Below are positions 39,301-61,591 of a stretch of DNA of 64,000 nucleotides, in pieces. Each line of letters starts with the position of its first letter. Positions within the stretch are counted from its first letter, which is position 1. Made by a program: the position numbers and the translations under genes. Under the pieces are notes generated by a model, which made no database searches, was not told where the DNA came from, and saw only the letters and a program-made list of their open reading frames with translations. The stretch covers positions 549,643 to 613,642 of the forward strand of contig NW_002060964.1 in NCBI RefSeq assembly GCF_000150275.1. The letters run 5' to 3'. The DNA comes from Trichoplax adhaerens (lineage: Eukaryota > Animalia > Placozoa).

Positions 39301-42300
39301 ACCTATATCACTGCGACAGCGGTAAGATACCTACCACTGTATTCGATACATATTGTAGAGAAGATTGCACATATAAATATACAGAAAACTTAAAATGATC
39401 ATTTATTTCCGAGATATTTATTCAATGACGTTGATCTTGCTAGTATATTGAATATCAATTTTAATGTTAGATTAACATCATATCAATCATAAATAGTTCT
39501 CGTCACTATTGATGTTATACTTTACTACTTCCTTCAGTAACATAAAGACTGAAATTGATTTATCTAGGTATTATAGCGACTTGTATTTGACATACAAATT
39601 GAATATAAAAATTCAGAGTACGAATAAATTAAAGCAATCATGAATGTCTCTAGTTATATTCAGTGCTATTTTTGACTTCTTTGAGTAATATAACTTATAT
39701 CTTATCCACAAATTGAATGCAAAAATTGAGAGCAAGAGTAAATCAAAACCATCATAAACAGCTCTCTTTATCGTCAATATCATTTCTTTCTCCTTTCAGT
39801 ATTATGAAGATTACAAATTTAAACAAGTGGATGACCGTCGTAATTTTAAGCAAGATTTTCAAAGTTTTATTGCCTTGGCTGCTTCTATCCCTAATCTTGT
39901 CGTTATGGTTATAAATATTTTCTTACAGCATCGGTGAGCATATAAACTTCTACAAATTAGTCCGTCATCATAACTATGAGTAAGATAGTTTTGAGGTCTG
40001 AGATGGCGCCGATAGATTCATCTATCACACCATTAAAAAGTATCAGTAGTGATTGCAGTTTCGGTGATCTTAGGCACAGAATATTTACTCTTTATTAAGC
40101 GAGTTTGTAGATTGCTAGCTCTCAACAACTTCTATTTCAATATTTTCAGGATATCCCTCATAGCCCGTTTTGTAGGATCTTTAATAGCAATTATTTCTAT
40201 CTTTGCCGTAACTTTAATCTTTATTTACATTGATACGTCAGCATGTGAGTACATTAACTACTACTGATGATTGAAATTTAAATGAAAGAATTATTCTAAT
40301 ATGTTATTATTACTATTCTACCACTACGCTACTTAGGGACAGAAGGCTTCTTTAATATAACATTAATTAGCATCGTTATATCTAATGGTAATGATCTCCG
40401 CATCTAAATACAGTTATATTCTCTACTCATAAAAAGTTTTCTCAATGAATATAGATTGATATTTTATTTGCTATGTTGAGATGCGTATATTCAATTAATT
40501 AAATTAAATAAGTAAACCAAACCTTACAGGTACATCTAATGACTAGCCAGTAAATGCATTATCTTATATATATTTATGTTATGTTATAGCTGCATCATCA
40601 TTATTCCAGAGTTCGACTTTTGGGTTAGCCGGCCATTTCCCACAAAAATACACTCAAGCCGTAGCAAATGGCCAGGTAAATTTCTACCTCTACCGTATGC
40701 AATATAAGATTTTCAGGAATTGAGTTTCAATTTTTATGAAACCTCTAATCTGAAACCATAATGTTACATTCAAATTTTAATTTAATAGGGACTGATTGGT
40801 ACTGCTATTCCAGTTATTGCAGTACTCAGCGTTGTTGTTAATCCAAATCCAACAGACAGTGCTTTAGCTTATTTCCTTTCCTGCCTATTTGTTTTAATCT
40901 TAACGTTGGTCAGTCTTATTTATCTAACTAAAATGGTAAGTTATAGTTTTTGCATTATGAAAGTAAGAAAAGCTAATGAATACCGCGGCTTGCAGTAAAT
41001 TCCAGAACTAATTTTTATATTTCCAATTGACTCTCGAAATAGAAATTTATTAAGAATCATGTCAGTCTTAGAAACAGAAGGAAAAGTAAGATTGATTGCT
41101 AATACACAACACTACGCAATATCCTGCAATAATATTTGCGGCCTTCTTTTATACTTTATATCCACCAAAATGCTGTTTAGGCATATCTCATTTCCAGATT
41201 TATGTTTACGCACAGGTGTAATACGAAATGGAAAGGAAGTTGAAATTGGTAAGGTAAAGCCAGAATATCGTAAAGTTTTTAAACAGGTAATTTTAAAATT
41301 AAATTAAAATGCGATCCAAAATGTTTAAACTTATAATCTATACAGTCTTAACAGAAGCTAACTTGCTTTTAATCAAGTATTCAACATGACTGATCTTTCA
41401 CATGCAATCTAGATTTGGCTATTGCTATTCTCAAATTGGCTCAATTTTTTTATCACATTGGCATGTTTCCCTGCCGTCTGTGCTAATATAAGATCGATGG
41501 ATAGCGATCCTGATCATCTTTGGAGTGGTAGGCTCTATCATCATTTTATCACATAATATTTGGTACCTTTTACTTACTTTGATTATTTTTCAACCATTAT
41601 AAGGAAAGTTATTCACGCCTGTAGCAACATTTTTAATGTTCGGATTAACGGACTGGATAGGCAAAGCAGCAGCAGCATGGATACCTGTGGTAAATATCAT
41701 TATAGCATATTTATTTCATCTGTATATAAATCAATCATCAGTGTTGGTAGATTTACTTTTGCTAATAAGTGACTACTTATACTGATGTTTAATGCTATAT
41801 TTTGCTAGCCAAAGAGACATCAAGTTTGGTTGGTAATATGTCGAATCGCTTTCGTACCAGTATTTATTTTCTGCAATTATAAACCTCATCTTCGGACTAT
41901 ACCCGTCATTTTTAACCACGATGGATATTACTTTGTATTTATGATTCTATTTGGATTAAGTAACGGCTTAATTGGGACGCGAATTATGATGTCTGCTCCT
42001 GAGTAAGTCAAACTTGATACAATGTTCGAAAAATAGTTACTAGATTGTGTTGTTGTGCGTAGATTAGCGGATTACATTACCTCATAACTTTCTACTGCCA
42101 CCATACACAATCAGCTGGACTGTATAATACAAAAAATTGCGGCAAATGTAACGTTGAAAATACTATAATACCCACAATTCTGCCTTTAATCAGATCCAAT
42201 TTCTAATTTGAATATGAAAATGTTAACAAAACTAGTATTTCGTATTATAATCATCGCAATCCATAAATCTTACTGAAAGATGTAATAACAGCTTCTCGAA

Positions 42301-42568
42301 CCTAATTCTCACCTAAATTATTATTTTTACGCTTGGAAATGGAATATAATTAAATGAAGGAATTACAGTATGTTACTATAGCATGTGCAAAAAATTTAAC
42401 CCGTACTTATTCAGTTCTGAATGTGTTATTCTCAAACCAAAAATCTACAGATCAGTAGCACCAAACCAACGCGGATTAGCAGGGACGATGATGTCTGCTT
42501 TTGTCGTCATTGGAATATTTACTGGGTCTTTACTCTCTCTCCTCATCTCTCACTTAGTTCAAATGTAA
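36362..42568 (+). CDS. Equilibrative nucleoside transporter (SLC29/ENT family), about 13 coding exons
   Basis: Spliced product contains ENT hallmarks: KDRYNLGYFILFLFGMTTLLPW (exon 39240-39321), FQSSTFGLAGHFPQKYTQAVANGQG, FFITLACFPAV, FLMFGLTDWIGK, RIAFVPVFIFCN, FGLSNG, and ends AGTMMSAFVVIGIFTGSLLS..QM* at 42568. Two upstream exons (36362-36547, about 36636-36837) give a long hydrophilic N-tail. Confidence 0.92.
37505..38100. repeat. Minisatellite, about 105-115 bp unit, ENT intron 2
   Basis: About 5 copies of gaaatgattccttatcctcctcagcttaaagttagccttaacttatgtcacgagttttaaatgcttttaaacggtatcaatgacagctatgctaattcaactt. Confidence 0.9.
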
Positions 42569-44687: not shown

Positions 44688-45057
44688 GTACTCCTCAAGA
44701 ATTTTAGTGTGCCGTGATGTATAAGTAACTTGTAGATTGCACGATAATTACGGTACATTTAAGAATAAGAAATATTGTACACTTGAAGTTAGTTTATTAT
44801 CAAAGTTGCATTTACCTTTCACTTTAAATGTCACGATAGGATTAAGATTTTAAGTTACTTATTTCTAAATACTTTCCCCTACAATTACTAGTACTCTTCA
44901 AGAATCTAAGTGTGCCATAATGTATAAGGAACATGTAGATTGTACCATAATTACATTTAAGAATAAGAAGTATTGTACGTTTGAAGGTAGTTTATTATCA
45001 AAGTCTTACTTATCCTTGCATTCTAAATTTTACGAAAGGATTCAGGCTTTAAGTTAT
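44688..45057. repeat. About 200-bp tandem duplication in the 3' UTR region of TPR gene A
   Basis: agtactc.tcaagaat..agtgtgcc..acatttaagaataagaa.tattgtac..tagtttattatcaaagt at about 44688-44858 and about 44890-45057. Confidence 0.8.
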
Positions 45058-45397
45058 TAATTTCCAATGCCATCACTGGAAGCTCCGCTTGCAGTTGCCA
45101 ATAGTTTCTCTCCAAAGCGTTGCACCGTCGTTACAGTATTCTCTTGAAGTAATCGACAGAATATTATGAAATCGGACCCACAACGACAGTAACATAAAAT
45201 CTCAAGTAGCATTTCTACTCGATCTTCTCTATGTTTCTCATTTCTGATGTCAGCAACTTGTCTACAGCTTAAAATGTGTTTCAACTTCAATGAATTTAAT
45301 ATTTCATCGATCGGTACTACTCTAATAAATTCTTCACCGTGCTCATTTAAAGCATGTTGTAACTGTTTGGTCGATGGCGTTTGCTCCTCATTTATGG
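45057..45397 (-). CDS. CARD-domain terminal exon of TPR gene A
   Basis: Open from the AG acceptor to TAA. Matches the CARD pattern L..h...li.....eiL..L....iLs......I.....r.d....LL..L...G...F..F...L by eye. Confidence 0.78.
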
Positions 45398-48300
45398 CTG
45401 TTGTATAAAAATTTGATAGAAATTTTATTTAAGAAATAGAATAATATTTCATTAACTATATCGCGAAAATATTGTTAATAAACCTAAATGAAGGCGGTAC
45501 ATCCCATTTAATAAGACCCGGTCTTGTATAACTTATGCATAGATCATGCACTTATAAAAACGTTTGCTTTTACTAAGCTAAAATTATGTTAATTTGAGTA
45601 AAGGACCGTACTTGAGACTGCTGTTGCGACCGTGTATCTACATAATGCAAATATAATCTACCATTCAGAATAAAATGAAATTCTGCGAATGGTTTTGTAT
45701 TCATCTATTATAGACTAAATTACGAACTATAAGTAGCCTGATCTAGTTGTAATCGGCGACATAAGAATTCTTTAAGACACTAGTAAAATATCCATTTTGT
45801 AATATACAGTAATCACAGGTCGATGCAATATAGTCAATAAAAGACAATACTATATTGAAATTAACAGAAATAGAAGTTACCTGATGCTATTGTTGAACGA
45901 TCTGTTTGTAGTTGATTGCTTGCGTCTGTTCGATGTGTAAATTCTTCCTCAGTTGCTAATTTTTGTTGCTTTGCAGCAGTATCAGATACCTGACAAAACT
46001 GGTCGTTACATTTTGCAATATGATCTTTTAACGTTTTCATTTTGGGATGATCTTCTTCGAATAAATTACGTAAAATAGTGACGGCTTTTTCATAATGTAA
46101 TTTGGCTCGATTATAATCGCATTGACGAAAGTAGACGTGCGCTTTATTTCGGTAAGAATTAGCGGCATAAGGATGGTCTTCGCTTAAGTTCTTCCGAGTG
46201 ATATTAAGCGACCTATCACACATAGCATGAGCTTCATCGAAATCACCTTGTTTCATGTTTACAGTTGCTATGCTGTTATATACCATAGCAAGAAAGGGAT
46301 GATCAGGTTTTATAAAACTTGCCCTGTAAACATCTTGAGATTGTTGGTGTTTAGCGAGAGCCTCTCCATATTTATCTTGCTTATTGTAGATATAGCCAAT
46401 GCATCCGTATGACATAGCAACATCTGGATGATTATCACCGAGTAATTCACGCTGAATTTTCAGTGATTGCTCATGCATAGAAAGAGCTCTATCGTATTCA
46501 CCTTGCTTACTGAGGACAAGACCAATGTTATTACGCAGACAAGCAACAATAATGCGACTGTTATAGGGTTTTTTTAGGTAAATATTTAGCGATTTGTTAT
46601 ACATAGAAAGAGCACCATCTAAATTTCCTTGAGAATAATATACATATCCGATACCTTTATATGACTTAGCAATATCAGGATGGTCGAGACCTAGAGCTGA
46701 TAATTGAATTTTGATTGCTTTTTCATGCATGAAAAGGGCCATTTTATACTTGCCTTGTTGGCTATAGACAATCCCTATGTTATTGTATGTTTCTGCAATA
46801 TCTGGATTGGTGTAACCAAGAACTTTGGTTTGGATTTGTACTGATTCCTCAAACTTACAAAGAGCATCTTCGTGCCTACCTAGAGCATAATAGACATTTC
46901 CCATATTATTATAGGACTTAGCTATATCATGATGGTTTTCGCCAAGAACTTTCGATTGTATATTGATTGCTTTCTCATACATAGAAAAAGCCTCTTCATA
47001 CTTGCCTTGATAGTAATAGATCTTTCCTATATTATTATTTGACTTTGCAACATCAGGATGATTTCGACCAAAGGCTGACATTTGAATTTTAAGAGCTTTC
47101 TCGTACGATGAAAGTGCTTCTTTATGCTTGCCTTCATATTCAAGAACAGCTCCGATGTTACTATGTGATTGTGCAACATCGGAATGTTCGTAGCCAAGGA
47201 CTGACAATCGAATTTGCAGCGATTCTTCATACATAGAATGGGCCCTTTTAGGCTCGTCTTGACGATAGCAGACATTTCCCATGTTGCTGTACGACTTTGC
47301 AACATCTGGATGATTCTTTCCGAGGCGCTCCGATCGAATTTTGAGTGACTTTTCATACTTAATACGAGCATCGTCATACTTGCTTTGACAGAAATAGACA
47401 TCTCCTATGTAACTATACGTCTGTGCAATATCAAGAGTATTATGATCGAGTTCTGACTTCTCCTGAATTTTAAGGGATAGATCAAACTTTAGAAGAGCTT
47501 CTTCATATTTGCCTTGACTAGAGTAAATAGCTCCTATACCATTGTATAACTTGGCAACATCGGGATGATTATGATCTAAAGATGATAACAGAATATTTTC
47601 CGACTTTTTATACATAGAAAGGGCCTCTTCATGTTTACCTTGGTCAAAATAGGCTGCTGCAATGTAGTTATACGATTTCGCGATAGCATGGTGATCATGT
47701 GCAAGACCTGATAATCTAATTTTAAGTGATTTTTCATACATAGAAATAGCCTCACCATGCTTGCCTTGACTAGAAAACACAGCTCCAATGTTATCGTATA
47801 AATGCGTAACATTAAGAGTTTCAGGCCCATAGATTGCTACAAGAATTTTGCGTGACTTTTCATACATAGAATAAGCATTATCGTATTCGGCCTGTCTAGA
47901 ATAAACCTTTCCCATGTTATTATAGGATTCTGCAACATCCAGATGATTGTTGCCTAAGACTGATGATCGGATTTTTAGCGATTTTTCGAACTCAGAAAGG
48001 GCCTCTTTGTATTTATCTTGTTTAAAATAGATATTACCAATGTTATTATACGTCTGCGCTAGATCGGGATGTGTTTGATCAAGGACTGATTTCTGAATTT
48101 TGAGCGATTTCTCATACTTGGCAATAGCATCTTCATCCTTGCCTTGATTAGAATAGACATTTGCCATTCTACTATATGATCTAGCAACGTCAGGATGGTT
48201 TTCGTTATAGACTGATAATTGAATTTCGAGAGCCTTGTTATACATAGCTAGGGCGTCTTCATACTTGCCTTGGCGAAAATACGTATCTCCCTCGCCGCTA

Positions 48301-49994
48301 TAAGATTTGGCAATATCAGGATGAATGTGACTAAAGACTTTTATTTGAATAACGATAGACTTCTTATAGCTAGAATGGGCCTCCTCGTACTTGCCTTGGC
48401 GAGAATAGATATTACCAATATAAATATATGTCTGCGCTATATCAGGATGATTGGAATCCGTAAAAGCCTTCTTTTGAACATTGAGCGCTTTATTGCACTT
48501 AGAAAGAGCTTCACCAAACTTGCCTTGATTTAAATAGACGTTCGCTATGCAGTTGTTTAGCCTGGCAACATCAGGATGATAGTAGCCGAGGACTGAGTGT
48601 CGAATTTTGATAGATTTCTCGAACATAGAAAGAGCCTCTTCATGCTTTCCTTGGTATTCCTTGATATTACCTATATTATAATAGGATTGAGCTATATCTG
48701 GATGATTATGATTACTACTAAAAGCTGATTTTTGAATTTCAAGAGATTTCTCGCACAAAGTAAGAGCTTGTTCATACTTGCCCTGAATTACGTAGATATT
48801 TCCTTGACTACTGTATACCTTCGCTATATCAGGATGATTATGACCATGTACTGATAATCGGATTTCCAGAGACTCCTTGTACATAGAAAGAGCCTCATCA
48901 TATTTGCCTAGGTCAGAAAAGACATTACCCTTGCTATGATAGGATTGTGCTATATCCGGATGATTACGATTAAGGACTGCCTTTTGAATTTGAAGCGATT
49001 TATCGTACTTAGAGAGAGCTTCCTCGTGCTTGCCTAGGCTAGAATAGGCATTTCCCATGCAGCTATGCGAGTTAGCAACATCGGCATGATTCTCGCCAAA
49101 GACTAATAATCGAATTTCCAGCGACTTCTTATACTCAGTAAGGGCCTCGTCATGTTTGCCTTGATGACTATAGACCTTTCCAATGCTATTGCGCGATTTT
49201 GCGATAATGGGATTATTGTAAACCAGGACTGCAAATTGAATTTTAAGTGCTTTCTCATACTTAGAAAGCGCCTCTTCATTCTTGCCTTGATGTAAATACA
49301 CATCCCCTATATGACTATATGTCTCTGCGAGGTCAGGGTGATCGGGATGGAAGACCGAAAGTTGAACTTTAAGTGACTTTCCAAACTTAGAATGGGCCTC
49401 TTCATATTCTCCTTGATTACAGTGCACAACTCCGATGTGATTGTATAACTTTGCGACATCAGCATGATTGTCGCCGTGGACTGCCGTTTGAATATCCATT
49501 GATTTGTTAAACATGGATAAAGCCTCGTTGTACTTGCCTTGATCGTTACAAGCTATGCCAATATAACGGTATGAATTGCTAATTTCTACTTTCTCGGTAG
49601 AACATTTTAATTCCTTGATATCTCGTGATTTTTCAAAATCAGCTAATGCTTCTTTCCAATCTCCTCGTAGACGTTTAATTTGGCCTTGAACGTCTAAACA
49701 TTGAGCATAGTTGATTTTTTCTGAAAGATTTTCAGCTATTTCAAGAGCTTTTCCACTAAAATGTTGGGCTTTTATGCCATCACCACGCTGTATATATATA
49801 TCGCAAAGTTGAAGATAAATCTGGCACTGATACTGATTCAACTGAGGAGTGTCTCGGCTGATGGCGTTCATTCCCTCGTTTATTCGAATATAGCAAGATA
49901 GAGCTTGATCAAGCTTACCGGCTTGAAGGTTTTTTTTACCTTCTTCGTCTAGAGATTGAAACTGTTGAGTAGATTTAGTCGTTTGATTGCCCAT
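45057..49994 (-). CDS. N-myristoylated TPR-array protein with C-terminal CARD (TPR gene A); exons 49994-45881 and 45397-45057
   Basis: The 1377-aa ORF starts MGNQTTK with an in-frame TGA two codons upstream and holds 28 KLC/NPHP3-type 42-aa TPRs. Donor TCAG|GTAAC at 45881/45880 joins in phase 1 to acceptor ACAACAG|CC at 45397, giving ..LQHALNEHGEEFIRVVPIDEILNSLKLKHILSCRQVADIRNEKHREDRVEMLLEILCYCRCGSDFIIFCRLLQE.., a CARD-like pattern. Small intervening exons cannot be excluded. Confidence 0.85.
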
Positions 49995-50744
49995 ATTTCA
50001 GATTTGAAAAAGGAAAATGAATATGAAATAATGGAACTCGAATTGAACTATGTGTTCTAGTCAAGATTTACGTTTATTTTCGAGTTGTGACTGGTATAAA
50101 GTATAAATAAAAGTCGTTAAATAACGCAAATTGCCGATATTAACCAAGATAGCTAGTCCGTGTTTTGTATAGATACTTTGGATTTAAATTTTCTTCAATC
50201 GAGTTAGAAAAATGAAATTTTCTGCCTGTTGTATGTTCAATCTAGAAAGAAATATCAATAGACTTAGGAAGTTCTAACAAACAAATGAAAACGTAAACGT
50301 GGCAATGTCCAATGGCCTCAATTAACATTGATTACCATTAGTACCATGTAATTCTAGTAGGCAATGCCACCTTGTAGGGCCATTGCTATGCCATCCTTTA
50401 TACTAAATCATTAATCTTAAGCTTATGCGGTTTACTATGGGTGTCTATGGCAATAGCCGAACAAGAGGTAATCCTGTTAGGCCAACGATATATCCTATGG
50501 AAGCACTCGCTAAAACTTTCAGCATACTGATTCGATATGTACAATTTGAAACGCTTAAATGTCCAGGAAAGGGAAAATTTTCTATAAGCAATCGTCAAAA
50601 ATGTAGTGCTGTATCAAGTATGATACTCGATACTTTTGATATTGACCGGTTTAAGCTAAAAAATGCTCTAGCATGTTCAGTATGGCTTCCCAAGTGTCTG
50701 CAATAAACTCTATAAATTTGGGCCAGAAGCAAAGGCCATTAATC

Positions 50745-51572
50745 AGATAGTTCTTAATCGTTTTCGATTTCGATCAAGGAGTAAGCTATGGAGATTGAGA
50801 AAATCTAGATGCGTGATCTTTCTTTAAATGTCATGAGCTGGTAATAGAATATGTTGTTTGAAGAAAATCAGATTGCTTTTTATACTTAATCGTTTCGAAT
50901 TTCGATTAAGGAACGAAAAAGTTATAGAGATGAAGAAAATCTAGATGCCTGATCTTTCTCTAAATATCATGAGCGGGTAATAGAGCGTGGGGTTTGGAAA
51001 AGATCGGACTGCTTATAAGTATTGAACCTTTAATCGTTTTGGACTTCGATTAAGGAGTAAGTTATAGAGATGGAGAAAAATCTAAATGCCTGATCTTTCT
51101 CTGAATGTCATGAACTTGTAATAGAACATGGCGTTTGAAGTAGATCAGACTGTTTAAACTCCTATCGTTTCGGATTTCAATTGAGGAAGGAGTAAGTTAT
51201 AGAGCAGGAGAAAAAAATCTAGCGGTATGATCTTTCTCTAAATATCATGAGCTTTTAGTAGAACATCGCGCTTGAAGAAGATCGGACTGTTTATTAACAT
51301 TAATCGTTTCGGATTTTGATCAAGGAAGGAATAAGTTATAGAGATGGAGGAAAATCTAGATGCCTGATCTTTCTCTAAATGTCATGAGCATGTAATAGAA
51401 TATGGCGTTTGGAGAAGATCGAACAGTTTATTAAACTCTAATCGTTGCGGATTTACATCAGGGAAGGAGTAAGCTATAAAGATGAAGAAAAATCGAAATG
51501 TCTAATCTTTCTCTAACTCCCACAAGCTTGTAATAGAATATGGCGTTTGGAGAATAACTGACTGTTTATTAA
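50745..51572. repeat. Tandem repeat, about 135-140 bp unit x6, upstream of TPR gene A
   Basis: Units start taatcgtttcg at about 50755, 50888, 51031, 51163, 51301 and 51440, each containing tgatctttctctaaat.tcatgagc. Confidence 0.9.
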
Positions 51573-53269
51573 GCTAGTCATTCAAGTCCATCTTGAAATG
51601 ATGGATAAAGATAGTGCGGTATTAGTTGCGGGCAGATGCGAATAGAGTAGGATACTATAGGTATCACTAAATCATACGTGGCCTCTAGATGTTATTTCTG
51701 TTGTTTAATATCGCTTTGATTATGTTATATGAAGATTGTAAAAATACATACAGTACTATGCCATATAGTAAGCAAAATTAATTTTAGAGAAATTAAATTG
51801 AAACGTAACAACTTCATTTCAATTTCAGCAGCCGAAATCCATGCAATGACAACTATCTAGTCTAGTGAAGTCGTAATCGATTCCTTGAAAAGATAATTTT
51901 TATCTTAATTCATACTGCAGCCCTAATCGTACATCGTTAAATCAATCGATTCTCAAACTCCGATGACAATAAGGGTGCTTGAGAAATGCTTTACTTAGAA
52001 ATAAAATTGAAACGCATAGAACATCACGAGAATAAGTTTACGGTTCTTCTGATAGCTGCCTCTAACTCGTGGTATTTAAAACTGACATTTCTCTCGAAGA
52101 CTTGTTCTAAACGATAAAACTTTATAGATGAAATAAACTATCTAGAAAGGGGTATGATTATACGTCTACCGGCACAAATGATAGCTAACAATTCAATAAA
52201 TTGCCTCAAAATAGATGGTACTATAGCAAGTCTACTCGTGGCTCTAACGGTTACTGCAATCTCATGGGTCATTAAGATTGACTATCGTCTTTATTTAAAC
52301 GGTATTTGAACCGGTTAAAATCGTAGTACAGTAATAAAGTAGCCTGTAAAGAAATTTGTGACAATCGGCACACTGGTATTTCACAAATTAAACGTGATTT
52401 TAACCGATAGGGCGTTAATAATTATTTCTAACCTGATGATAAATTCCTTTTTTTAATTATCTTCGATCCTGATCGAAGTATGCCGCGGTAGAAATTTCTG
52501 TGAACCGGCATACCACGAGTAATCTTTATATAAGGTACAAAGAGTAAAATTTAAAATAACAAATGCATCCATGCATGAATTGATTATGAAAAAATTTGTC
52601 TTAAATAAATAAAAAATGATTGAAAGCAAGGTAATTTTGCACACATTAACGAGGAAATTACGGTATAGCAATAGGAAAAAATTAATTGATGCGTCAAACT
52701 GTTTTACATTGAGGCTTAAACATCGGTCTAAAATTCTCCGCTAGCTGATTATTATAATGAGTTGCCAATACTAATTTGCATATATCCCCATATTTTAATA
52801 TGCCATTAACTTAAATTATTTAGGTACTGTAAGAGTAATGGAGTAGTGTACTATAAGAGATAGTAGCTTGAAACTAGATACCACATTGTTTAACATTGGC
52901 TATAATTGCGCTAAATTCGAAAATTGGATAGCAGAAGTGGCATAGTTGTAGTACTCTTTAGATATTTGAATTACTCGACAATTGATACTGTCAATAGGTT
53001 ACTTACACTAATATTTAATATAGTCAGTAACATGCTCTAACAACTTGCAAAGGTCCTTTAATAACTATGCAATGAAAATAAGCATTCCTGAACAGTCACA
53101 GCGTATAATTTAATAAGCAAAATTACCAGAAAATGGATCAGATCGTTAATCTGATACTGGACTTGCGATCATATGATTAGAAAAATGTATTACTTGCTAG
53201 AATTGTCAGCATGATAGACTGTAATCATTAAATGTGGACTGAGTAGATGATTCGATCTTGAATGTATGA

Positions 53270-55892
53270 ATTTACTGTAATGTATATTTATGTCCATCAT
53301 AATCACGTAATGTAATACCGCTGAAAATATCGTCATAATAAATGATTTTTGAAAGTATGTGCACTGTTTTTATCCTAACTAGAACTTCTACCGTCACATA
53401 CATATCGTATACAATAGTAACTTATGCCATAATGATGCAGGTATTTCAAAAAAGTCTAAAATTTGTTTAATCGATCGCTACTTTATTATTTGCAAAATTA
53501 GTAAGGAATAACTCAATGATCAGATACGATCAACTAATAACGGTACACTACACCTTAGTAAGAAATGATTTCCGGTACTATATTTAAGTTTATTGTGCAG
53601 TCAGTGAGTCTCTAATTTTAGTTCATAAAAGTTTCTAATCTATAATATCTATCACTTTTACGCTACATTTTTTGTTAGGTTAGTAATGCTGCAAGCAATC
53701 AGTACACCGAGTAATCATCATCTATGACCGTAATTCAGTGCTGTCGTCATGAACTATTACACTATTCCGATGAAAGGGATTTGATCACTTAAAAATGCAG
53801 TAATCATAATTACTTTGGTTATCTACGCCAAAGGTTTAATAACGTACTCAAATATCTTTGTAGTTGCTTGTAAACTACCACCACAGCTCAATTCCGCAAA
53901 TAGCCTCAATAGATTGTAGTACAAGTAGTAAAGAATGTTGCTGGCGCTCTTTAGTGGACAATTCTTAGTAATAGCAATAATCTAATAATGACGTAAAGTA
54001 ATTGTATTTTTTAGTCTACACCAATAAACAGCCAATAAGTAGTAGGCTAAAGCTCTTAAGATACTAGAGATACCTTCCAGTCTAGTTAGAACTAAAAATA
54101 TGAACAAAGTTTGATATTTTATTCTACACTATTGAAATTTGATTAACACCGGCTGTAACCGGTTGCTGTGGTATTATAGCCGTAGATCAAGATGATAAAC
54201 TCAGATAACTAATCCTATCCATTAATGATCGAGCATGTGAAGAGTTTATTCGAAACGGCATTACTTAGGTGTTTATGCCACCACTAAAAACATAGCTGAT
54301 TTTATCGCTGTGGTAACTGGTATATTACTTGAACGGAACAACTAGTTTTCGTACTAGAAACTTTATGTACTGTAGCAGCTACATTATTTATCGTTACAAG
54401 CAATTGAGTTAAGGCTAACACTTGGATGATCATAGCATAAGGTCAGTGTTGCTGTTAGGTTGTGACACAATCATAAGTAAGATGGCGGCGCTAGACTTGA
54501 GTGGACTAGGGGTATCAGGAATTATATTCAGTCGTTGGGATAGTTGCATATTATTAGAGGATAATTTTTTAATCGATATTCTAAGAGCTGGCTGTGTACA
54601 TATAGCTTACCTGGTCAAAGTTCTACTATTGTAATATTCAACAATATAATTTAGGTAATAACCCATCTTTAACCACTACACTGAAAGGCTAATTATTGGG
54701 TGATTAGTTTATAGAGTAGAGCTAGAAGTAGTACGTTATTACATGGGCTTACGATCGTATGATAACAAAAATATTCTGCATGCTAGAATTTTCAGCGCGT
54801 TCGATTGTAATATAATCATCGCTTGCCGACCGATTAAATGATTCGATCGCATGATAACGAAAATATGGTGTATGCTACAATTTTCAGCGCGATCGATTGC
54901 AATCTTATCATTGCTTCAGGACTAATTAAATCTTGATCGTATAAAATCGCTTTAATGTATATTTATGTCCATCATTATGACGTAATAATAAGCGATCTAA
55001 AGTATACAAGCTATTTTTATTCTTAAATTTCTACCATTACGTATATACCATATGCAATAGTGGCTTACGTCATGATGATGCAAGATATTACAGAAATAGT
55101 CTAAAACTTATTTAATAATCGCTACTTTATTATTTGCAAAATTGACAAGGAATAACTAAATGATCAGATACGATCAACTCATTACCCTACGCCTTAGCGA
55201 GAAATAATTTCTAGTGCTATATTTAACTTTATTGTGCAGTCAGTGAGTCTCTAACTTTAGCTGATAAAGGTTTCTAATCTATAATACCCATCACTATTAC
55301 GATTCGTTTTTGTTACGGTAGCAATGCTGCAAGTAATCAGTACATCTGGTAATGATCGTCTATGACCTTAATTCAGAGCTATCATCATGAACTATTACAC
55401 TATCCTGATGACATGGAATGGATCATTTAATATGCAACAATCATAATTATACTGGTTATCCACGCCAAAGGTTTAATAACGTACTCAAATATCTCTGTAG
55501 CTACTTGTAAACTACCAACATAGCTCAATTTCGTAAATAGCTTCAATAGATTGTAATCCAAGTAATAAAAAATATTACTAGTGCTTTTTAGTGAAAAGTC
55601 ATCGTAGGAACAATAATTCACAATGACGTAAAGTAGTTATACTTTTCTATCTACACTATTGATCGAGTATATAAACAATTTATTTAAAACAGCGCTATTT
55701 ACGCATTTATGTAGTCATTAAAATTATGTAGACGCTTTTATTACTGTGGTAACAGCAATATTACTTAAATAGAACATCTAGTTTTTATACTAACGACATT
55801 GTGCTTGCTAACCGCCACATGATTGATCATAAAAGGCAATTAAATAAAGACTAATACTTGGATAATCATACCATAAGGTTGGTGTTGCTATT
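53270..55892. repeat. Local about 1-kb duplication: 53270-54456 is similar to 54945-55892
   Basis: Long shared blocks such as tttattgtgcagtcagtgagtctctaa, acgccaaaggtttaataacgtactcaaatatct and atcagatacgatcaact. Confidence 0.85.
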
Positions 55893-56873
55893 ATGCCACT
55901 TTTCAAACTAACACAGGCAATGGCTACAAATATCAGTAAACAGTAATTTAAATTATTTATTTTAAAAATTAAATGGAACATAAAATTTACATATTGATAG
56001 CACTAAAGCGCCTCATAGCAGTATTTACGATACTTAGCAGATAACTGTATTGAAATTAGAATGAAAAGTCCGAATATTGTAATTAAAACAAAAGGATACT
56101 AGTTTTTCATTGTTAAACAATTTTATGATACTTACTTAAATCAAATAGTCACTAATCTAATTTTACTAACCCTTACTATCTCTTTTGCAAGGAAGAAATT
56201 TAATATACATGATTTGATATAGCGATAAAACAAAATAAAAATTTGAAAGTTTATCCACGTCGCCTGTCCATAGTTCAACTGATGATTTTTTTGCTCATGT
56301 TGATCTAATGATAAAATAAGCGTATGAGAACCATGTTAAATTTAATATTATTAAATAATTAGATTAAGATGAAAGATTTTCTCCTAAGTTTTCCTAACGT
56401 TATAATATTTCTAATCATAAACTAGCTTACTCCTATTTCATAGTAGTTGTAGAATAAATAAAATTCGTAACAAAATATAAAGCACTCATAACATTTAGCG
56501 TTAATCTGAATAGCCATTATTAAATCGGCTAAAACTACACCGTAGTAAAATTTAGTCTGAATAAAATTCCTATATTATATCTAATTTATTACGGTACACA
56601 ATAATGCTTGATTACTAAAAGTACATTAACTAATAACTAGCTAAAAACATTGACAATCACAACAGCACTTAAAATATCGGCATCATAATTAGCACTTGAG
56701 AATATAGTCACAAAAATCATATCGGATTTACTTCACCGAGTTGAAGCGTAGTATACAGAAACAGCCAACAATACTTTATATCGATCAATCTATAGTATAC
56801 TATAACAGATATAGCTATATTACACGCAAAAACAAGAATTCTTGATCTTAAAACATAATTTTACTGAAGATAC

Positions 56874-57130
56874 TTACTTATTGATGCCGATCCTTTCTGC
56901 TAGGGGACCAAGGTCGCTTTTAACTAAAGCATCGATCAATTTTGGCTTTGTCAGTTTACAAGTTGGGTTTTTGTAGCATCGGTATAACATTTCATAGCAT
57001 TGTTCTTCAATACCATTTATTTCTTTAGCAATTTTTCTAACTTCGTTGTAGTCCATGTCTAACTCTATAGCCAACCTTCGCCAGTCTACGCCTAAATCTC
57101 TATAAATTTCTTTTATGCATAATAAAATAT
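56874..57130 (-). CDS. Death-domain terminal exon of TPR gene B
   Basis: DILLCIKEIYRDLGVDWRRLAIELDMDYNEVRKIAKEINGIEEQCYEMLYRCYKNPTCKLTKPKLIDALVKSDLGPLAERI matches the DD consensus (LG.DW..LA..L......I......EQ.Y.ML..W......t...Li.AL......lae.i). Confidence 0.85.
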
Positions 57131-60100
57131 CTGTAATAAAGTAAAGTAGTTGATATAAATTAGGTCCCTTTAACAATTGTTTATTAACTAATAAGAATAG
57201 TTATGCGAGACATCACGGTTTCATTTGCAAAAATATATACGCATAACATTAAATAGATTTAATATTATATCTTGCAGTTACTTTAAAATAGCCCATTAAT
57301 ATAAGCGCTTGTAAGGTATACTGTACTCTAGCTGCAAGGTTAATTTAGTCATTTTAAATTATTACGGTACTAAAATAATCTGCATCGCCGTCGATATTTG
57401 CTCCAACGTTTTAATATTAAAATAGTCAATTTTTTGCAACCTTCAGTGGATTGCTCACTACTAAATATTAGTTCATTCTGCAATCAATATTTCGCACCAA
57501 CATTACCCAAATGATGAAACATATTTTATAATAAACTAAAATAAGGCCTTAACATGTTTACTTAGTAGTAAGGATAAAATTGATATACAATATATAAAAG
57601 TTACCTGATGAATGAGCAGGAATATTGATGAAATGTCGATCTTTTATGTCGTCTTGTCCATGATCCCGAAAAGCTACGGATACTTGTCGCATAGTAGCAG
57701 CTTCATCAAGTTGTTGTAGTGCATCATGAGAATCCGCTATATTATCGTATAAGCTTGCTATTTTGGGATTACTATCGCCAAATAAAAAATTTAAAATATC
57801 CATCGCTTTTCGATAAAACGATAAAGCATCTTCAAATTTACTTTGACAAAAGTAAATTTTAGCCTTATTTCGATAAGAGTTGGCAGTATAAAGATGATTT
57901 TCACATAATTGATCCCTACTAATTCTCAATGAACGCTCACACATAGCCAAAGCCTCATCATATTTACCTTGCTCCGTATCGATAATAGCAATGCTATTAT
58001 AAGACATAGCAATGATGGGATGCTCATTACCAGCAAACTTTCTGACGTAGCTTCTACATGACTTTTCATGCATCGCGAAAGACTCTGCATACTTTCCTTG
58101 CTTATAACGAGCATATCCCATACAGCCATATGACATAGCTATATCAGGATGATCTTCACTTAATGACTTCTTTTGAATGTTAAGCGATTTCTCATGTAAA
58201 CTAAGAGCCTGATCGACTTTTCCTTGCTTACTGTAGACAAGGCCAATTTCATTATATAACCGAGCCACGATGGGACAGCTATCACCAAGTTTTGCAATAT
58301 AAATCTCTAGCGACTTGTTATACATAGCAAGAGCGGTGTCTAATTTATGTTGAATGTAATATACATATCCAATACTGTTAAAGGATTTCGCGATATCAAG
58401 GTGTTTATTATCGTGAACTGTTAATCGAATTTTGAACGACTTTTCAAGCGAAGAAAGAGCATGATCATACTTGCATTGATATGTATAGGCAACTCCAATA
58501 TTATGATGAGACTCTGCAATATCCGGATGATTGCTACCTAGGACCGATAATCGAATTTTAAGTGACTTTTCATGGTTAGAAATAGCCTCTTGATACTTTC
58601 CCTGACTCTGGCATACAAGGCCAGTGTTGTTATATGACTGTGCAATATCAAGATGGTCATGGCTAAAAAAAGACGTTTGAATTCTAAGTGACTTTTCAAA
58701 GTTAGATAAAGCCTCATCGTAGTTGGCTTGATCATTATAGATAAATCCTTTATTGTTATATAACTGTGCAATTTTTGGATGATTGTGGCCTAATGCTGAA
58801 GATATTATTTCGTATGATTTGTCGTACATGGAAAGAGCATCTGTGTACTTGCCTTGATTGGAATAGACATCGCCTTTATTATTGTATGATTGTGCAACAT
58901 CAGGATGACTGTGACCTAGGGCTGCTAATTGAATTTCAAGTGATTTCTCATACATAGATAGAGCCTCGTTATCCTTGCCTTGGTTCTTGTAGACAATTCC
59001 GATGTTGTTGTAGGATTTGGCAACATCGGGATGATGGTGACCAAGAACGGATAATTGAATTGCAAGAGATTTCTCATACTCTGTAAGAGCTTCCCTATAT
59101 TTGCCTTGATTCATGTAGACAAGACCCTTACTATTATAAGACTGTGCAACATCAAGATGATCATAACCAAGAACTAATATTTGAATTTCGAGTGATTTAT
59201 TGATCATTAAAAGAGCTTCTTCATGCTTGCCTTGACTAGTAAGTACAGCTCCTTTGTTATTATATGTTTTTGCGACATCAGGATGGTGATGACCAAGGAC
59301 TGATAACTGGATATCAAGTGATTTCTTAAACTCAGAAAAGGCCTCATCATATTTGCCTTGATACTTATACACAATTCCAAACTTATTGTATAACTTGGCA
59401 ATATCAGGATGATTGTGATCAAGAACTTTTTTCTGAATTTTGAGCGATTTCTTGTACTCTGAAATAGCCTCTTCATATTTACCTTGATTACACAAGACAG
59501 ATCCCTTATTACCATGTGATAAAGCAACCTGAGCATGTTCATAGCCTAAGGTTGATTGTTGAACTTTGAGCGATTTGTCATACTTTGTCAGAGCATTGTC
59601 ATATTCACCTTGATTCATATAGACGAGACCAATGTTATTATGGCACTTGGCAACATCAGGATGATTGCGACCCAGGATAGACGATCGAATTTTTAAAGAC
59701 TTCTCATATACGGAAAGAGCCAATTTATGCTTGCCTTGAGCATTGTATACATTTCCTATGTTGTTGTATGTCTTGGCGATATCAAGATGATTTTCACCAA
59801 GAACGCATGATTGAATCTCGGTAGCTTTCTCATATTCAGAAAGAGCCATAGTATACTTGCTTTGATTAAAATAAACTGCTCCTTTGCAATTATATGTTTT
59901 TGCGACATCTGGATGATTACTACCAAGAGCTTCTATTTGAAGTTTTAGTGAATTTTCATGTTGAGTAAGAGCTTTGTCGTATTTTCCTTGATCGTTATAG
60001 ACAGCTCCAAAGTTGTTGTAGGAAATTGCAACATCTGGATGATGATGACCAAGAACTGATAATTGAATATCGAGAGACTTTTGGTAGATAGATAGAGCAT

Positions 60101-61591
60101 CTTCATGCTTGCCTTGATTAGAATAGACATCTCCAATATTATTATAGGACTGTGCAAGATCAGGGTGATTACCTTCGAGAACTGATGATTGAATCTTTAG
60201 CGCCTTTTGATACTTAGAAAGAGCCTCAACATCCTTACCTTGGCTTTTATAAATACTTCCAATGCTAATATACGTTTTTGCAACATCTGGATGATCGTAT
60301 CCAAGGCTCATATGTTGAATTTTAAGTGCCTTGTTGTGCACAGAAAGTGCTTCTTCGTGATTACCTTGATTGTTATTTGTATTTCCCATATTATTGTAAG
60401 ATTTTGCAACTTCAGGATGTTCGTAACCGAGAACAGCTCCTTGAATTTTAAGAGACTTGTTATACATAGAAAGAGCCTCATCGTACTTTCCTTGGCAATC
60501 ATACACCTTTCCCTTGCTGTTATATAACTTAGCAATATCAGGATGCTGATGACCAAAGACTGACGATTTAATCTTGAACGATTTTTCATACTCGGAAAGT
60601 GCTTCTTCATACTTGCCTTGATGAAAATAGACGTTGCCTATGTTTTGTAAAGACTGTGCAACATCGGGATGTTTGTCGCCAAGGATAGATAATTGAATTT
60701 TGAGTGCATTATTGTGCAAAGTAAGAGCTTCTTCGTGCTTGCCTTGATCATCCTTAACATTTCCCATATTACCATACGACTTGGCAATATCTGGATGATT
60801 GTCATCAAAGACTGCCTTTCGAATATTTAACGCCTTCTCATACATATCTAGAGCTTGAACATGTTTTCCTTGCTTAGAATAGACATCTCCCATGCTGGTA
60901 CGAGTCTGTGCAATATCAGGGTGACTATGATCCAAGACTAAAATTGAATTTGTAATGATTTTTGATGCTTTGAAAAAGCTTCGCTGTATTTGCCTTGATT
61001 TTGATAGACAATTCCCATATTATTGTGGCATTTTGCAATGCCTTGATTATTGACATCGACGGCTGACGTAAGAAATTTCAATGAATTTTCATACGAGCTA
61101 ATAGCTTGGTCATATTTACCTTGATGATTATAAATTGTTCCAATTAGACTATGAGAATTTCCGACGTTTAATTTGTCGTCACTAGAATATTTTAATTTCA
61201 TATCCAGTGATTTAGTATAATCACTTAAGGCTGCATCCAATTCCCCTTGTAACTGTTTAATTTCGCCTTGTCTATCTTGACATTTAGCGATTTTCATTTT
61301 ATCTTCTAATTTTGCAGCTATTTTTTTCGCTTGCAGGCACCATTCTTCGCCTTTCATCCAATCACATCGTTGTATATATATGTCACTAAAACTAAGATAA
61401 AGTTCACATTGAAAGCGATCAAGTTCATCAAGGTTATTAGGGCTTCCGGATATAGTTTTAATCATTTCATGGATTTTATTATAACAAGACTCTGCTTCGT
61501 CAAGCTTGCCAGATTGGTAAAATTGAAGACCGTCTTCGCGTAGAGCTTTTAACTTTTTGGAAATCTCAAATTTACTCGATTGATTGCCCAT
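56874..61591 (-). CDS. N-myristoylated TPR-array protein with C-terminal Death domain (TPR gene B); 1-bp frameshift at about 60940
   Basis: ORFs 60938-61591 (MGNQSSK, in-frame TAA two codons upstream) and 57558-60935 are one gene broken by a single missing base; together they hold 27 TPRs. Donor TCAG|GTAAC at 57605/57604 joins in phase 1 to acceptor TTACAG|AT at 57130. Confidence 0.8.

What the first reader, a model, noticed from the sequence alone, without database searches (positions are those of the whole stretch)
45057..61591. Tandem myristoylated TPR arrays with interchangeable death-fold effector exons (TPR-CARD next to TPR-Death domain)
Seen: two paralogous - strand genes share an MGNQ(T/S)(T/S)K start, a single about 4-kb exon of 27-28 42-aa TPRs, and an identical end-of-exon donor (..TCA G|GTAACTT.TAT). 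Each donor splices in phase 1, in frame, to a small terminal exon: a CARD (45397-45057) in gene A and a Death domain (57130-56874) in gene B. The ORF track hides this because both ORFs run on into the intron (GNFY..*). Established: CARD and DD are homotypic adaptors that recruit caspases, FADD, RIPK or MyD88-type partners, and TPR arrays are the sensor domains of many fungal and invertebrate NLR-like proteins, normally with an N-terminal effector and a central NACHT/NB-ARC domain. Inference: this is a reversed, NTPase-free architecture (membrane anchor, variable TPR sensor, C-terminal swappable death fold), i.e. a candidate family of membrane-tethered cytosolic immune or cell-death receptors diversified by exon shuffling. 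Automated annotation would probably label these just nephrocystin-3/KLC-like. I cannot confirm novelty without a search.
Basis: partly seen in the sequence, partly recalled or inferred. Interest (0 to 1): 0.9.

Follow-up and report, generated by a model that had tools for sequence, protein, structure and literature searches.

The report
Switch-less TPR-CARD and TPR-Death gene pair
Two neighbouring Trichoplax genes join a long TPR repeat array directly to a cell-death adaptor domain (a CARD in one, a Death domain in the other). They are GTPase-less offshoots of a published placozoan gene family, one copy carries a frameshift, and splicing and function are still untested.

Summary
Gene A (49994-45057, minus strand) is intact: an MGNQTTK start, about 28 TPRs in one exon, a phase-1 donor after 45881, a 483-nt intron and a terminal exon that is a CARD. 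The CARD call rests on Pfam at 21 bits (just under the cut-off), an AlphaFold model at pLDDT 89.5, and a best fold match to the Apaf-1 CARD.

Gene B (61591-56874) has the same layout and ends in a Death domain (Pfam 37 bits). Its TPR exon is not one open frame: one base is missing in a T-run near 60940. That is either a young pseudogene or a sequence error.

The genome is Trichoplax adhaerens. The genes belong to the large TPR-(Roc-COR)-Death/CARD family, whose Roco members were published in 2014. A and B lack the roughly 750-codon Roc-COR exon.

A and B are sister genes by their head domains, yet they carry different death-fold tails. First-exon donors are phase 1 wherever I could see them, and the confirmed CARD-exon acceptors are phase 1. 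Tail swapping without frame loss is therefore plausible.

Gly2, the myristoylation site, is present in only 5 of 30 related heads.

This scan had already noted switch-less TPR-Death genes elsewhere in this genome. A direct TPR-CARD fusion appears to be new.

The parts
45881..49994 (-). Gene A exon 1: MGNQTTK start, about 115-aa head, about 28 TPRs, cap and an approximately 60-aa linker. The donor lies after 45881 (CAG|GTAACT, phase 1).
   Evidence: Open frame of 1371 codons. Pfam TPR_12 at E 3e-293. Repeat count. In-frame TGA one codon before the ATG.
45398..45880 (-). Gene A intron, 483 nt (inferred). The read-through frame stops after 6 codons.
   Evidence: No Roc/COR remnant by tblastn.
45057..45397 (-). 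Gene A terminal exon: a CARD with a phase-1 acceptor (cag|CC) and stop TAA at 45059-45057. It has no start codon of its own that could give the whole domain.
   Evidence: Pfam CARD 21 bits, E 3.5e-4. 41 paralogous exons in the genome, several over the CARD cut-off. AF2 pLDDT 89.5. Foldseek best match Apaf-1 CARD. Not listed as a stand-alone ORF of 80 aa or more.
60941..61591 (-). Gene B exon 1, first piece: MGNQSSK start, head and 3 TPRs. It ends at in-frame TAG 60940-60938.
   Evidence: In-frame TAA two codons before the ATG.
60936..60947 (-). Frame break in gene B. One base is missing in a T-run, judged from the TPR register (KSLQIQ..VLDHSHPD).
57605..60947 (-). Gene B exon 1, second piece (other frame): about 25 TPRs, cap and linker. 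The donor lies after 57605 (CAG|GTAACT, phase 1).
   Evidence: Open frame. Pfam TPR_12 at E about 0. 50% aa identity to gene A.
57131..57604 (-). Gene B intron, 474 nt (inferred).
   Evidence: Not alignable to the intron of A except for 17 nt at the donor.
56874..57130 (-). Gene B terminal exon: a Death domain with a phase-1 acceptor (cag|AT) and stop TAA at 56876-56874.
   Evidence: Pfam Death 37.1 bits and 35.8 bits in the genome scan. The nearest solved sequence is the PIDD death domain, E 5e-4.
49995..56873 (.). Spacer of 6.9 kb between the two genes. No convincing coding ORF. It holds a 138-nt tandem repeat and a 0.7-kb duplication.
   Evidence: No Rfam match.

Best explanation
What it is. 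These are two tandem sister genes of the placozoan TPR-(Roc-COR)-death-fold family. They lack the single, roughly 750-codon Roc-COR exon. The head+TPR exon is therefore joined, through one short phase-1 intron, straight to a terminal death-fold exon.

The two genes. Gene A is an intact TPR-CARD gene. Gene B is a TPR-Death gene carrying a one-base frame break, from either a very recent inactivation or a sequence error.

What is shown. Exon anatomy, domain identities, family membership, the sister relationship, and phase compatibility.

What is inferred.
- The two exons are spliced as proposed.
- The protein works as a switch-less scaffold. The TPR solenoid binds a ligand or partner.
- Clustering of several molecules then brings the CARD or Death domains close enough to nucleate a homotypic death-fold assembly. 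Clustering could happen on a multivalent ligand, on a Roco paralogue, or at a membrane through a myristoylated Gly2.
- Possible partners are CARD/Death adaptors or caspases. This would resemble the way the PIDD death domain seeds the PIDDosome.

How the different tails arose. The tails of the two sisters differ because terminal exons flanked by phase-1 introns can be exchanged or captured without breaking the frame.
For: Anatomy and domains.

CARD fold. The CARD family profile matches the CED-3, BCL10, RAIDD and Apaf-1 CARDs.

Family links:
- A's CARD is 43-49% identical to the tails of a Trichoplax sp. H2 TPR-Roc-COR-CARD protein (P0081). It is similarly close to a head-COR remnant-CARD protein (P0122), a CARD-Death adaptor (P0129) and a Death-Death-CARD protein (P0146).
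- The genome holds at least 95 related heads, 41 related CARD exons, 118 Pfam Death and about 50 COR-A hits.
- Roc-COR sits in one exon of about 700-800 codons.

Phases:
- Phase-1 G|GTAA donors were seen at the end of the first exon in 7 of 7 relatives whose exon end I hold.
- Phase-1 acceptors are confirmed against annotated proteins for three CARD exons. A rougher scan suggests the same for most close CARD and Death paralogues.

Relationships:
- A and B are sisters by head tree (95/89).
- They are each other's best match by cap (47%). The next best cap belongs to a TPR-Roc-COR-Death gene on C1389.

Need for an upstream exon: neither terminal exon has its own start codon for the domain.

Other switch-less loci: by coordinates, at least four other loci show TPR-to-Death geometry. 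These are C1396 near 924 kb, C1413 near 141 and 155 kb, and C1384 near 243 kb.
Against:
- No public predicted protein of 62-196 aa holds A's CARD exon. None of 754-2400 aa holds the tail of A's first exon. Gene A therefore seems unannotated at full length.
- Gene B is out of frame as assembled.
- The ten genes closest to A+B by head have no Death, CARD or COR hit downstream by coordinates. TPR-only products are therefore common in this clade.
- The CARD tree does not resolve a donor.
- Gly2 is not conserved.
- Function is inferred from domain precedent only.
Confidence: 0.6

Rival explanations
1. Regulators or decoys rather than sensors. The GTPase-less proteins would bind, through their TPRs or their death fold, into the signalling complexes of full TPR-Roc-COR-death-fold paralogues and damp or redirect them. 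CARD-only and pyrin-only proteins do this in vertebrates.
For: They derive from, or sit beside, a large family with a GTPase switch. Their death folds are closely related to those of the Roco members. The lack of an oligomerisation engine fits a passive role.
Against: A decoy would not need about 28 diverged TPRs kept open over 4.1 kb. There are no interaction data. The one complex prediction gave no answer.
Confidence: 0.2
2. The terminal exons are not used. The genes would make TPR-only proteins ending in the read-through codons. The downstream CARD and Death exons would be stranded remnants, and gene B a pseudogene.
For: The ten closest head relatives have no detectable death-fold exon downstream. 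No public protein model joins these exons. Gene B has a frame break.
Against: - Both tail exons are fully open and keep the conserved core residues of their families.
- They fold confidently.
- They have good acceptors in the phase that matches the donor, the phase used across the family.
- They lie 474-483 nt downstream on the same strand.
- In a 32% G+C genome a stranded exon would soon pick up stop codons.
Confidence: 0.15
3. Non-immune scaffolds. These would be KLC/NPHP3-like TPR proteins of the cytoskeleton, cilia or trafficking that use a death fold simply as a protein-binding module, with no role in defence or cell death.
For: The TPRs are of the kinesin light chain / nephrocystin-3 type. 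Relatives are annotated 'Nephrocystin-3'. Death folds also occur in non-death contexts such as ankyrins and THOC1; THOC1 is among the weak sequence matches of B's domain.
Against: The family is greatly expanded, clustered and variable in its tails. That pattern is typical of defence or conflict genes rather than housekeeping scaffolds. The nearest solved relatives are PIDD, CED-3, RAIDD and Apaf-1.
Confidence: 0.1

Closest known systems
Placozoan TPR-Roc-COR-Death/CARD Roco proteins (Civiero et al. 2014, PMC4104024; e.g. TRIADDRAFT_61714 = P0008, and Trichoplax sp. H2 'Nephrocystin-3' = P0081)
   Same: Same head domain, same KLC/NPHP3-type TPR array, same cap, and the same subfamilies of C-terminal CARD and Death exons. 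The first exon ends in a phase-1 donor and the confirmed CARD tail exons begin with a phase-1 acceptor.
   Different: A and B have no Roc GTPase and no COR domain. The exon of about 750 codons that carries them is absent, and no remnant is left.
PIDD1 and the PIDDosome (LRR - ZU5-UPA - Death domain; partner RAIDD = CARD-Death; caspase-2)
   Same: A repeat array is followed by a C-terminal death domain, with no NTPase. B's Death domain is nearest in sequence to the PIDD death domain (E 5e-4). The genome encodes a RAIDD-like CARD-Death protein (P0129) whose CARD is 45% identical to A's.
   Different: TPRs instead of LRRs. No ZU5-UPA autoprocessing module. Gene A ends in a CARD, not a Death domain. 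No binding is shown (one search gave no answer).
NLR / Apaf-1-like STAND proteins with TPR or WD40 repeats in placozoans and Hydra (Kamm et al. 2019, PMC6321704)
   Same: The same domain vocabulary (CARD or Death plus TPR repeats) and the same presumed logic: a repeat sensor coupled to a death-fold effector.
   Different: Opposite order (death fold at the C-terminus) and no NACHT or NB-ARC domain.
Switch-less TPR-Death genes elsewhere in this genome
   Same: Head+TPR exon followed within about 0.5-1.8 kb by a Death exon, with no COR hit between. Loci: C1396 near 924 kb, C1413 near 141 and 155 kb, C1384 near 243 kb.
   Different: Gene A ends in a CARD. Among the 30 best loci of this CARD subfamily, only A has a TPR array within 1.5 kb upstream. 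A and B are a tandem sister pair with unlike tails, and both keep Gly2.
Vertebrate repeat-plus-C-terminal-death-domain proteins without NTPase (ANKDD1A/B, NF-kB p100/p105, ankyrins); from my own knowledge, not tested here
   Same: A repeat array is followed by a C-terminal death domain, with no nucleotide switch.
   Different: Ankyrin repeats rather than TPRs. Unrelated genes. None ends in a CARD.

Membership tests
CARD (PF00619), gene A terminal exon | Score at or above the Pfam gathering cut-off (23.9 bits) | tested here: not met
   21.0 bits, E 3.5e-4. The whole placozoan subfamily scores near the line: P0129 gets 20 bits and the P0081 tail is not listed. Paralogues L008, L009, L010, L014, L016, L018 and L021 pass in the genome scan.
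CARD (PF00619), gene A terminal exon | Six-helix death fold with a broken first helix (H1a/H1b), closest in structure to known CARDs | tested here: met
   AF2 pLDDT 89.5, with helices 9-18 and 20-26 split. All top Foldseek PDB matches are CARDs. The Apaf-1 CARD gives TM 0.85-0.87 and rmsd 1.4 A over 92 columns, although the E-values are only about 0.02. The family profile hits the CED-3 CARD at E 2e-6. The nearest ESM Atlas clusters are CARDs.
Death domain (PF00531), gene B terminal exon | Score above the Pfam gathering cut-off (22.6 bits) | tested here: met
   37.1 bits, E 3.4e-9, covering 9-82 of 86 profile positions.
KLC/NPHP3-type TPR arrays (TPR_12, TPR_10, TPR_NPHP3) | Tandem 42-aa (extended 34+8) TPR units over the Pfam cut-offs | tested here: met
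   TPR_12 scores 947 bits (A) and 1057 bits (B second piece). TPR_NPHP3 scores 479 and 434 bits. The period is 42 aa / 126 nt.
Roco proteins (Roc-COR GTPases) | Roc GTPase domain followed by a COR domain | tested here: not met
   Neither ORF matches Roc or COR. tblastn with the Roc-COR regions of P0008 and P0081 finds nothing in the 64-kb window. No COR-A hit on this contig.
Placozoan TPR-head gene family (the body shared by Roco and switch-less members) | Conserved head of about 115 aa before the TPRs, conserved cap after them, and a first exon ending in a phase-1 donor | tested here: met
   At least 95 head matches. Cap matches. Phase-1 donors in A, B and 7 of 7 relatives examined.
NLR / STAND receptors | Central NACHT or NB-ARC NTPase | tested here: not met
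   Pfam lists only repeat families among the best 25 for both ORFs. TPR units fill residues from about 100 to 1300, leaving no room for an NTPase.
N-myristoylated proteins | Met-Gly start with a small, uncharged residue at position 3 and Ser/Thr at position 6 (PROSITE PS00008-type pattern; the pattern is from my own knowledge) | tested here: met
   MGNQTTK and MGNQSSK fit. In-frame stops just upstream rule out a longer N-terminus. Only 5 of 30 related heads keep Gly2.
N-myristoylated proteins | Myristate actually attached; membrane association | not testable with these tools
   This needs NMT assays or metabolic labelling. There is no second membrane signal (Cys or a basic cluster) in the first 30 residues.
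PIDD1-like proteins | ZU5-UPA autoprocessing module before the death domain | tested here: not met
   Neither gene matches ZU5 or UPA. The resemblance is functional only.

The most novel reading that the evidence does not exclude
A and B would represent a working receptor type of their own. It would be a lipid-anchored TPR sensor with no nucleotide switch, which nucleates CARD or Death assemblies directly when ligand clusters it. Its effector output would be re-assigned during evolution by swapping phase-1 terminal exons. Placozoans would then run NTPase-independent death-fold signalling alongside their Roco and NLR systems.
Probability: 0.15. Interest if true: 0.75.

Novelty: new variant of a known kind. 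Interest (0 to 1): 0.45.

Why it matters
Placozoans have a very large, barely studied set of TPR, Roco and death-fold genes that may form their intracellular defence or cell-death machinery.

This pair shows the modular logic of that family. The same TPR body can be wired to a CARD or to a Death domain, with or without a GTPase switch, because the confirmed module boundaries are phase 1.

If the switch-less forms are expressed and active, they would show how death-fold signalling can be triggered without an NTPase. They would also be simple test cases for what the TPR arrays recognise.

The locus also shows that public annotation misses these tails. No full-length model of gene A was found.

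Tried and rejected
RNA evidence:
Tails of the closest relatives could then only be judged from hit coordinates.

Protein searches:
- The whole TPR ORF as a query was swamped by unrelated TPR proteins.
- The CARD exon found no public protein of 62-196 aa.
- The end of A's first exon found no protein of 754-2400 aa.
- These blanks say nothing about other length ranges.

Exons were searched apart, by reference.

CARD tree: too short a domain to resolve where A's CARD came from.

Introns: those of A and B do not align beyond 17 nt at the donor, so no recombination breakpoint can be placed.

Flanks of the closest Death paralogues (L032-L034) show no informative ORFs.

Complex prediction of A's CARD with the CARD of the CARD-Death protein P0129 gave no answer, score 0.00. 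This is evidence neither for nor against binding.

Considered and rejected:
- A small intron that would bypass B's frame break. The TPR register shows exactly one missing base.
- A hidden Roc-COR remnant in the introns or the spacer.
- Structured RNA in the window.


Full report
**Where we are.** The window is contig C1393:549643-613642 of a 105.6-Mb, 1414-contig assembly.
- Proteins named for Trichoplax adhaerens match loci of this genome. The N-terminus of TRIADDRAFT_61714 (P0008) equals the start read from locus L085. P0122 and P0146 map at 100% identity.
- A Trichoplax sp. H2 protein (P0081) maps at 99%.
- Earlier notes of this scan also call the genome Trichoplax.

**Observation, gene A.**
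- The minus-strand frame from ATG 49994 is open for 1371 codons up to the proposed donor. It runs on for six more codons (GNFYFC, then stop).
- It starts MGNQTTK, with a TGA one codon upstream of the ATG. No upstream coding exon can therefore extend it.
- Pfam sees only TPR families: TPR_12 at 947 bits and TPR_NPHP3 at 479 bits.
- A simple motif count gives about 28 units at a 42-aa period. Units are 60-73% identical at the DNA level, so the array is old rather than recently homogenised.
- The donor is CATCAG|GTAACT after 45881. The acceptor is ttatacaacag|CC at 45397. The split codon G|CC keeps the frame (phase 1), and the exon ends at TAA 45059-45057.

**Is the terminal exon of A a CARD?**
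- Pfam gives CARD at 21.0 bits, below the 23.9 cut-off. On that test alone the answer is no.
- The same exon has 41 paralogues in the genome. Several of them pass the CARD cut-off in a genome-wide scan.
- An all-against-library HMMER search finds 37 relatives, best 49% identical. One is the C-terminus of P0081, a TPR-Roc-COR protein.
- With 26 of these relatives as an alignment, AlphaFold2 gives pLDDT 89.5 and six helices, the first one broken (9-18 and 20-26).
- All leading Foldseek matches in the PDB are CARDs. The Apaf-1 CARD comes first (TM 0.85-0.87 by target length, rmsd 1.4 A over 92 columns), though the E-values are only about 0.02.
- The family profile hits the CED-3, BCL10, RAIDD and Apaf-1 CARDs by sequence. 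The nearest ESM Atlas clusters are CARD clusters, the first mostly placozoan.
- I conclude it is a CARD of a divergent placozoan subfamily that sits just under Pfam's line. P0129 scores 20 bits, and the tail of P0081 is not listed at all.

**Observation, gene B.**
- The start is MGNQSSK at 61591, with a TAA two codons upstream.
The frame stops at TAG 60940-60938 after 217 codons. The TPRs continue in another frame, open for more than 1100 codons down to the donor.
- At the break the repeat register (KSLQIQ, two residues, VLDHSHPD) shows five bases (tttta) where six are needed. That is a one-base loss in a T-run.
- Everything else in B is intact. This includes the donor CATCAG|GTAACT after 57605, the acceptor ttattacag|AT at 57130 (phase 1), and a terminal exon ending at TAA 56876-56874.
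- That exon is a Death domain: 37.1 bits against a cut-off of 22.6. Its nearest solved relative by sequence is the PIDD death domain (E 5e-4).
- In a genome of 32% G+C, two long frames staying open on either side of a single lesion mean one of two things. Either the inactivation is very recent, or it is an assembly or allelic error. I could not tell which, because I had no access to reads.

**No NTPase.**
- Neither ORF matches Roc, COR, NACHT or NB-ARC.
- tblastn with the Roc-COR parts of P0008 and P0081 finds nothing in the 64-kb window. The only non-TPR match is P0081's CARD on A's terminal exon.
- The introns are 483 and 474 nt. In this genome Roc-COR lies in one exon of about 700-800 codons.

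**The family.**
- The 115-aa head of gene A matches at least 95 places in the genome, most at the start of long TPR frames.
- The genome also holds 118 Pfam Death hits, 39 Pfam CARD hits and about 50 COR-A hits.
- By coordinates, the full layout (head+TPR exon, Roc-COR exon, death-fold exon) is seen several times. Examples:
  - C1389: cap 89915, COR 86081, Death 84249.
  - C1414: cap 12077658, COR 12075541, CARD 12073185. This is the orthologue of P0081.
  - C1411, C1392, and the P0008 locus.
- Civiero et al. 2014 (PMC4104024) already listed at least 17 T. adhaerens Roco genes whose Roc-COR is flanked by TPR, LRR, CARD and death domains. Kamm et al. 2019 (PMC6321704) described placozoan NLRs with TPR or WD40 repeats and CARD, death-like or Death effectors.
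- I found no paper that names a TPR-Death or TPR-CARD layout without an NTPase. The library does not hold every journal.
- By coordinates, at least four further loci have a Death exon 0.5-1.8 kb after the cap with no COR hit between. These are C1396 near 924 kb, C1413 near 141 and 155 kb, and C1384 near 243 kb. Two on C1402 have gaps of about 2.5 kb and are borderline.
- Earlier notes of this scan report such switch-less TPR-Death genes on other DNA of this genome. None reports a direct TPR-CARD gene.
- Among the 30 best loci of A's CARD subfamily, only A has a TPR array within 1.5 kb upstream.

**Are the junctions credible without RNA?**
1. Neither terminal exon has a start codon that could give the domain, so each needs an upstream exon. 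The only coding exon upstream on that strand is the TPR exon.
2. The acceptor phase is the family's phase. Mapping annotated proteins onto the loci shows phase-1 acceptors at the equivalent place for three CARD exons: P0081 (ctctag|AT), P0122 (cctag|GT) and P0146 (tgtag|CC). A rougher scan suggests the same for most close CARD and Death paralogues.
3. The donor phase is also the family's phase. In all seven relatives whose first-exon end I hold, a G|GTAA donor in phase 1 lies a few codons before the read-through stop, as in A and B.
4. Both tails keep the conserved core residues of their families and fold well.

I put the chance that A is spliced as proposed at about 0.8.

**Exon exchange.**
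- A tree of the first 215 residues puts A and B together (ultrafast bootstrap 95, SH-aLRT 89). Their clade is sister (95/94) to ten long-TPR genes.
- The cap search gives B as A's best match (47%). The next is the TPR-Roc-COR-Death gene on C1389.
- Overall A and B are 50% identical in the TPR array and 40% in the head. Their introns are unalignable apart from 17 nt at the donor.
- The two sisters therefore carry death folds of different families. At least one tail was replaced or captured after, or around, the duplication.
- The ten sister-clade genes have no Death, CARD or COR hit within about 10 kb downstream by coordinates. I cannot say whether A+B gained tails or the others lost them.
- The CARD tree is unresolved and names no donor.

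**The lipid anchor.**
- MGNQTTK and MGNQSSK fit the usual N-myristoylation pattern: Gly2, an uncharged residue 3, Ser/Thr at 6 and Lys at 7. The pattern is from my own knowledge.
- Among 30 related heads only five start Met-Gly: A, B, L061, L076 and L088. The rest have Asp, Glu, Ala or Asn at position 2 but often keep the N-Q-S-x-K stretch.
- The motif may be ancestral and often lost, or gained several times. It does not define the family.
- No cysteine or basic cluster follows that could hold the protein on a membrane. 'Membrane-tethered' is a hypothesis only.

**Mechanism.**
- Best reading: these are switch-less scaffold proteins. The TPR solenoid binds something, and clustering brings the CARD or Death tails together. 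The tails then nucleate homotypic assemblies with other death-fold proteins.
- The genome offers such partners. P0129 is a RAIDD-like CARD-Death protein whose CARD is 45% identical to A's. P0146 is a Death-Death-CARD protein.
- The closest working analogy is PIDD1 and the PIDDosome.
- All of this is inferred from domain precedent.
- Rivals: regulators or decoys of the Roco paralogues; unused tail exons with TPR-only products; non-immune scaffolds.

**Verdict.**
- This is a real and mostly well-described locus.
- The claim of a separate receptor class is too strong. This is a new variant (GTPase-less, with the first direct TPR-CARD seen here) of a published placozoan family, and this scan has met its TPR-Death relatives before on other DNA.
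- Expression and function are open.

Noticed in passing
window 50800-51571: Tandem repeat of about 138 nt, some 5-6 copies at 62-81% identity, in the spacer just upstream of gene A's start.
   Followed up: no
window 53250-53956 and 54925-55593: Direct duplication of about 0.7 kb, 82-89% identical, copies 1.64 kb apart, in the spacer between the two genes. No ORF of note.
   Followed up: no
window 41830-42568 (+): Short plus-strand ORFs whose translations look, by eye only, like the C-terminal membrane helices of an equilibrative nucleoside transporter. Probably exons of a neighbouring gene.
   Followed up: no
L002 = G000:C1339:36012-39329 (protein P0122): A 385-aa annotated protein consists of a family head (MNNQSTK start, no Gly2), a low-complexity stretch, a short remnant of the COR C-terminus and a CARD. 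It looks like a Roco gene caught part-way through losing its TPRs and GTPase.
   Followed up: partly
G000:C1404:1.69-1.81 Mb (L006, L008, L009, L010): Dense cluster of CARD and Death exons, including the RAIDD-like CARD-Death gene P0129. Seen only through hit coordinates.
   Followed up: partly
L060-L089 (heads of 30 family members): Residues 3-7 of the N-terminus (N-Q-S-x-K) recur in many paralogues even where Gly2 is replaced by Asp, Glu, Ala or Asn. This suggests a constraint on the N-terminal peptide that is not explained by myristoylation alone.
   Followed up: partly
window 44754-44819 and 44952-45017: Two copies of a 66-nt repeat, 85% identical and 198 nt apart, just downstream of gene A's stop codon.
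   Followed up: no
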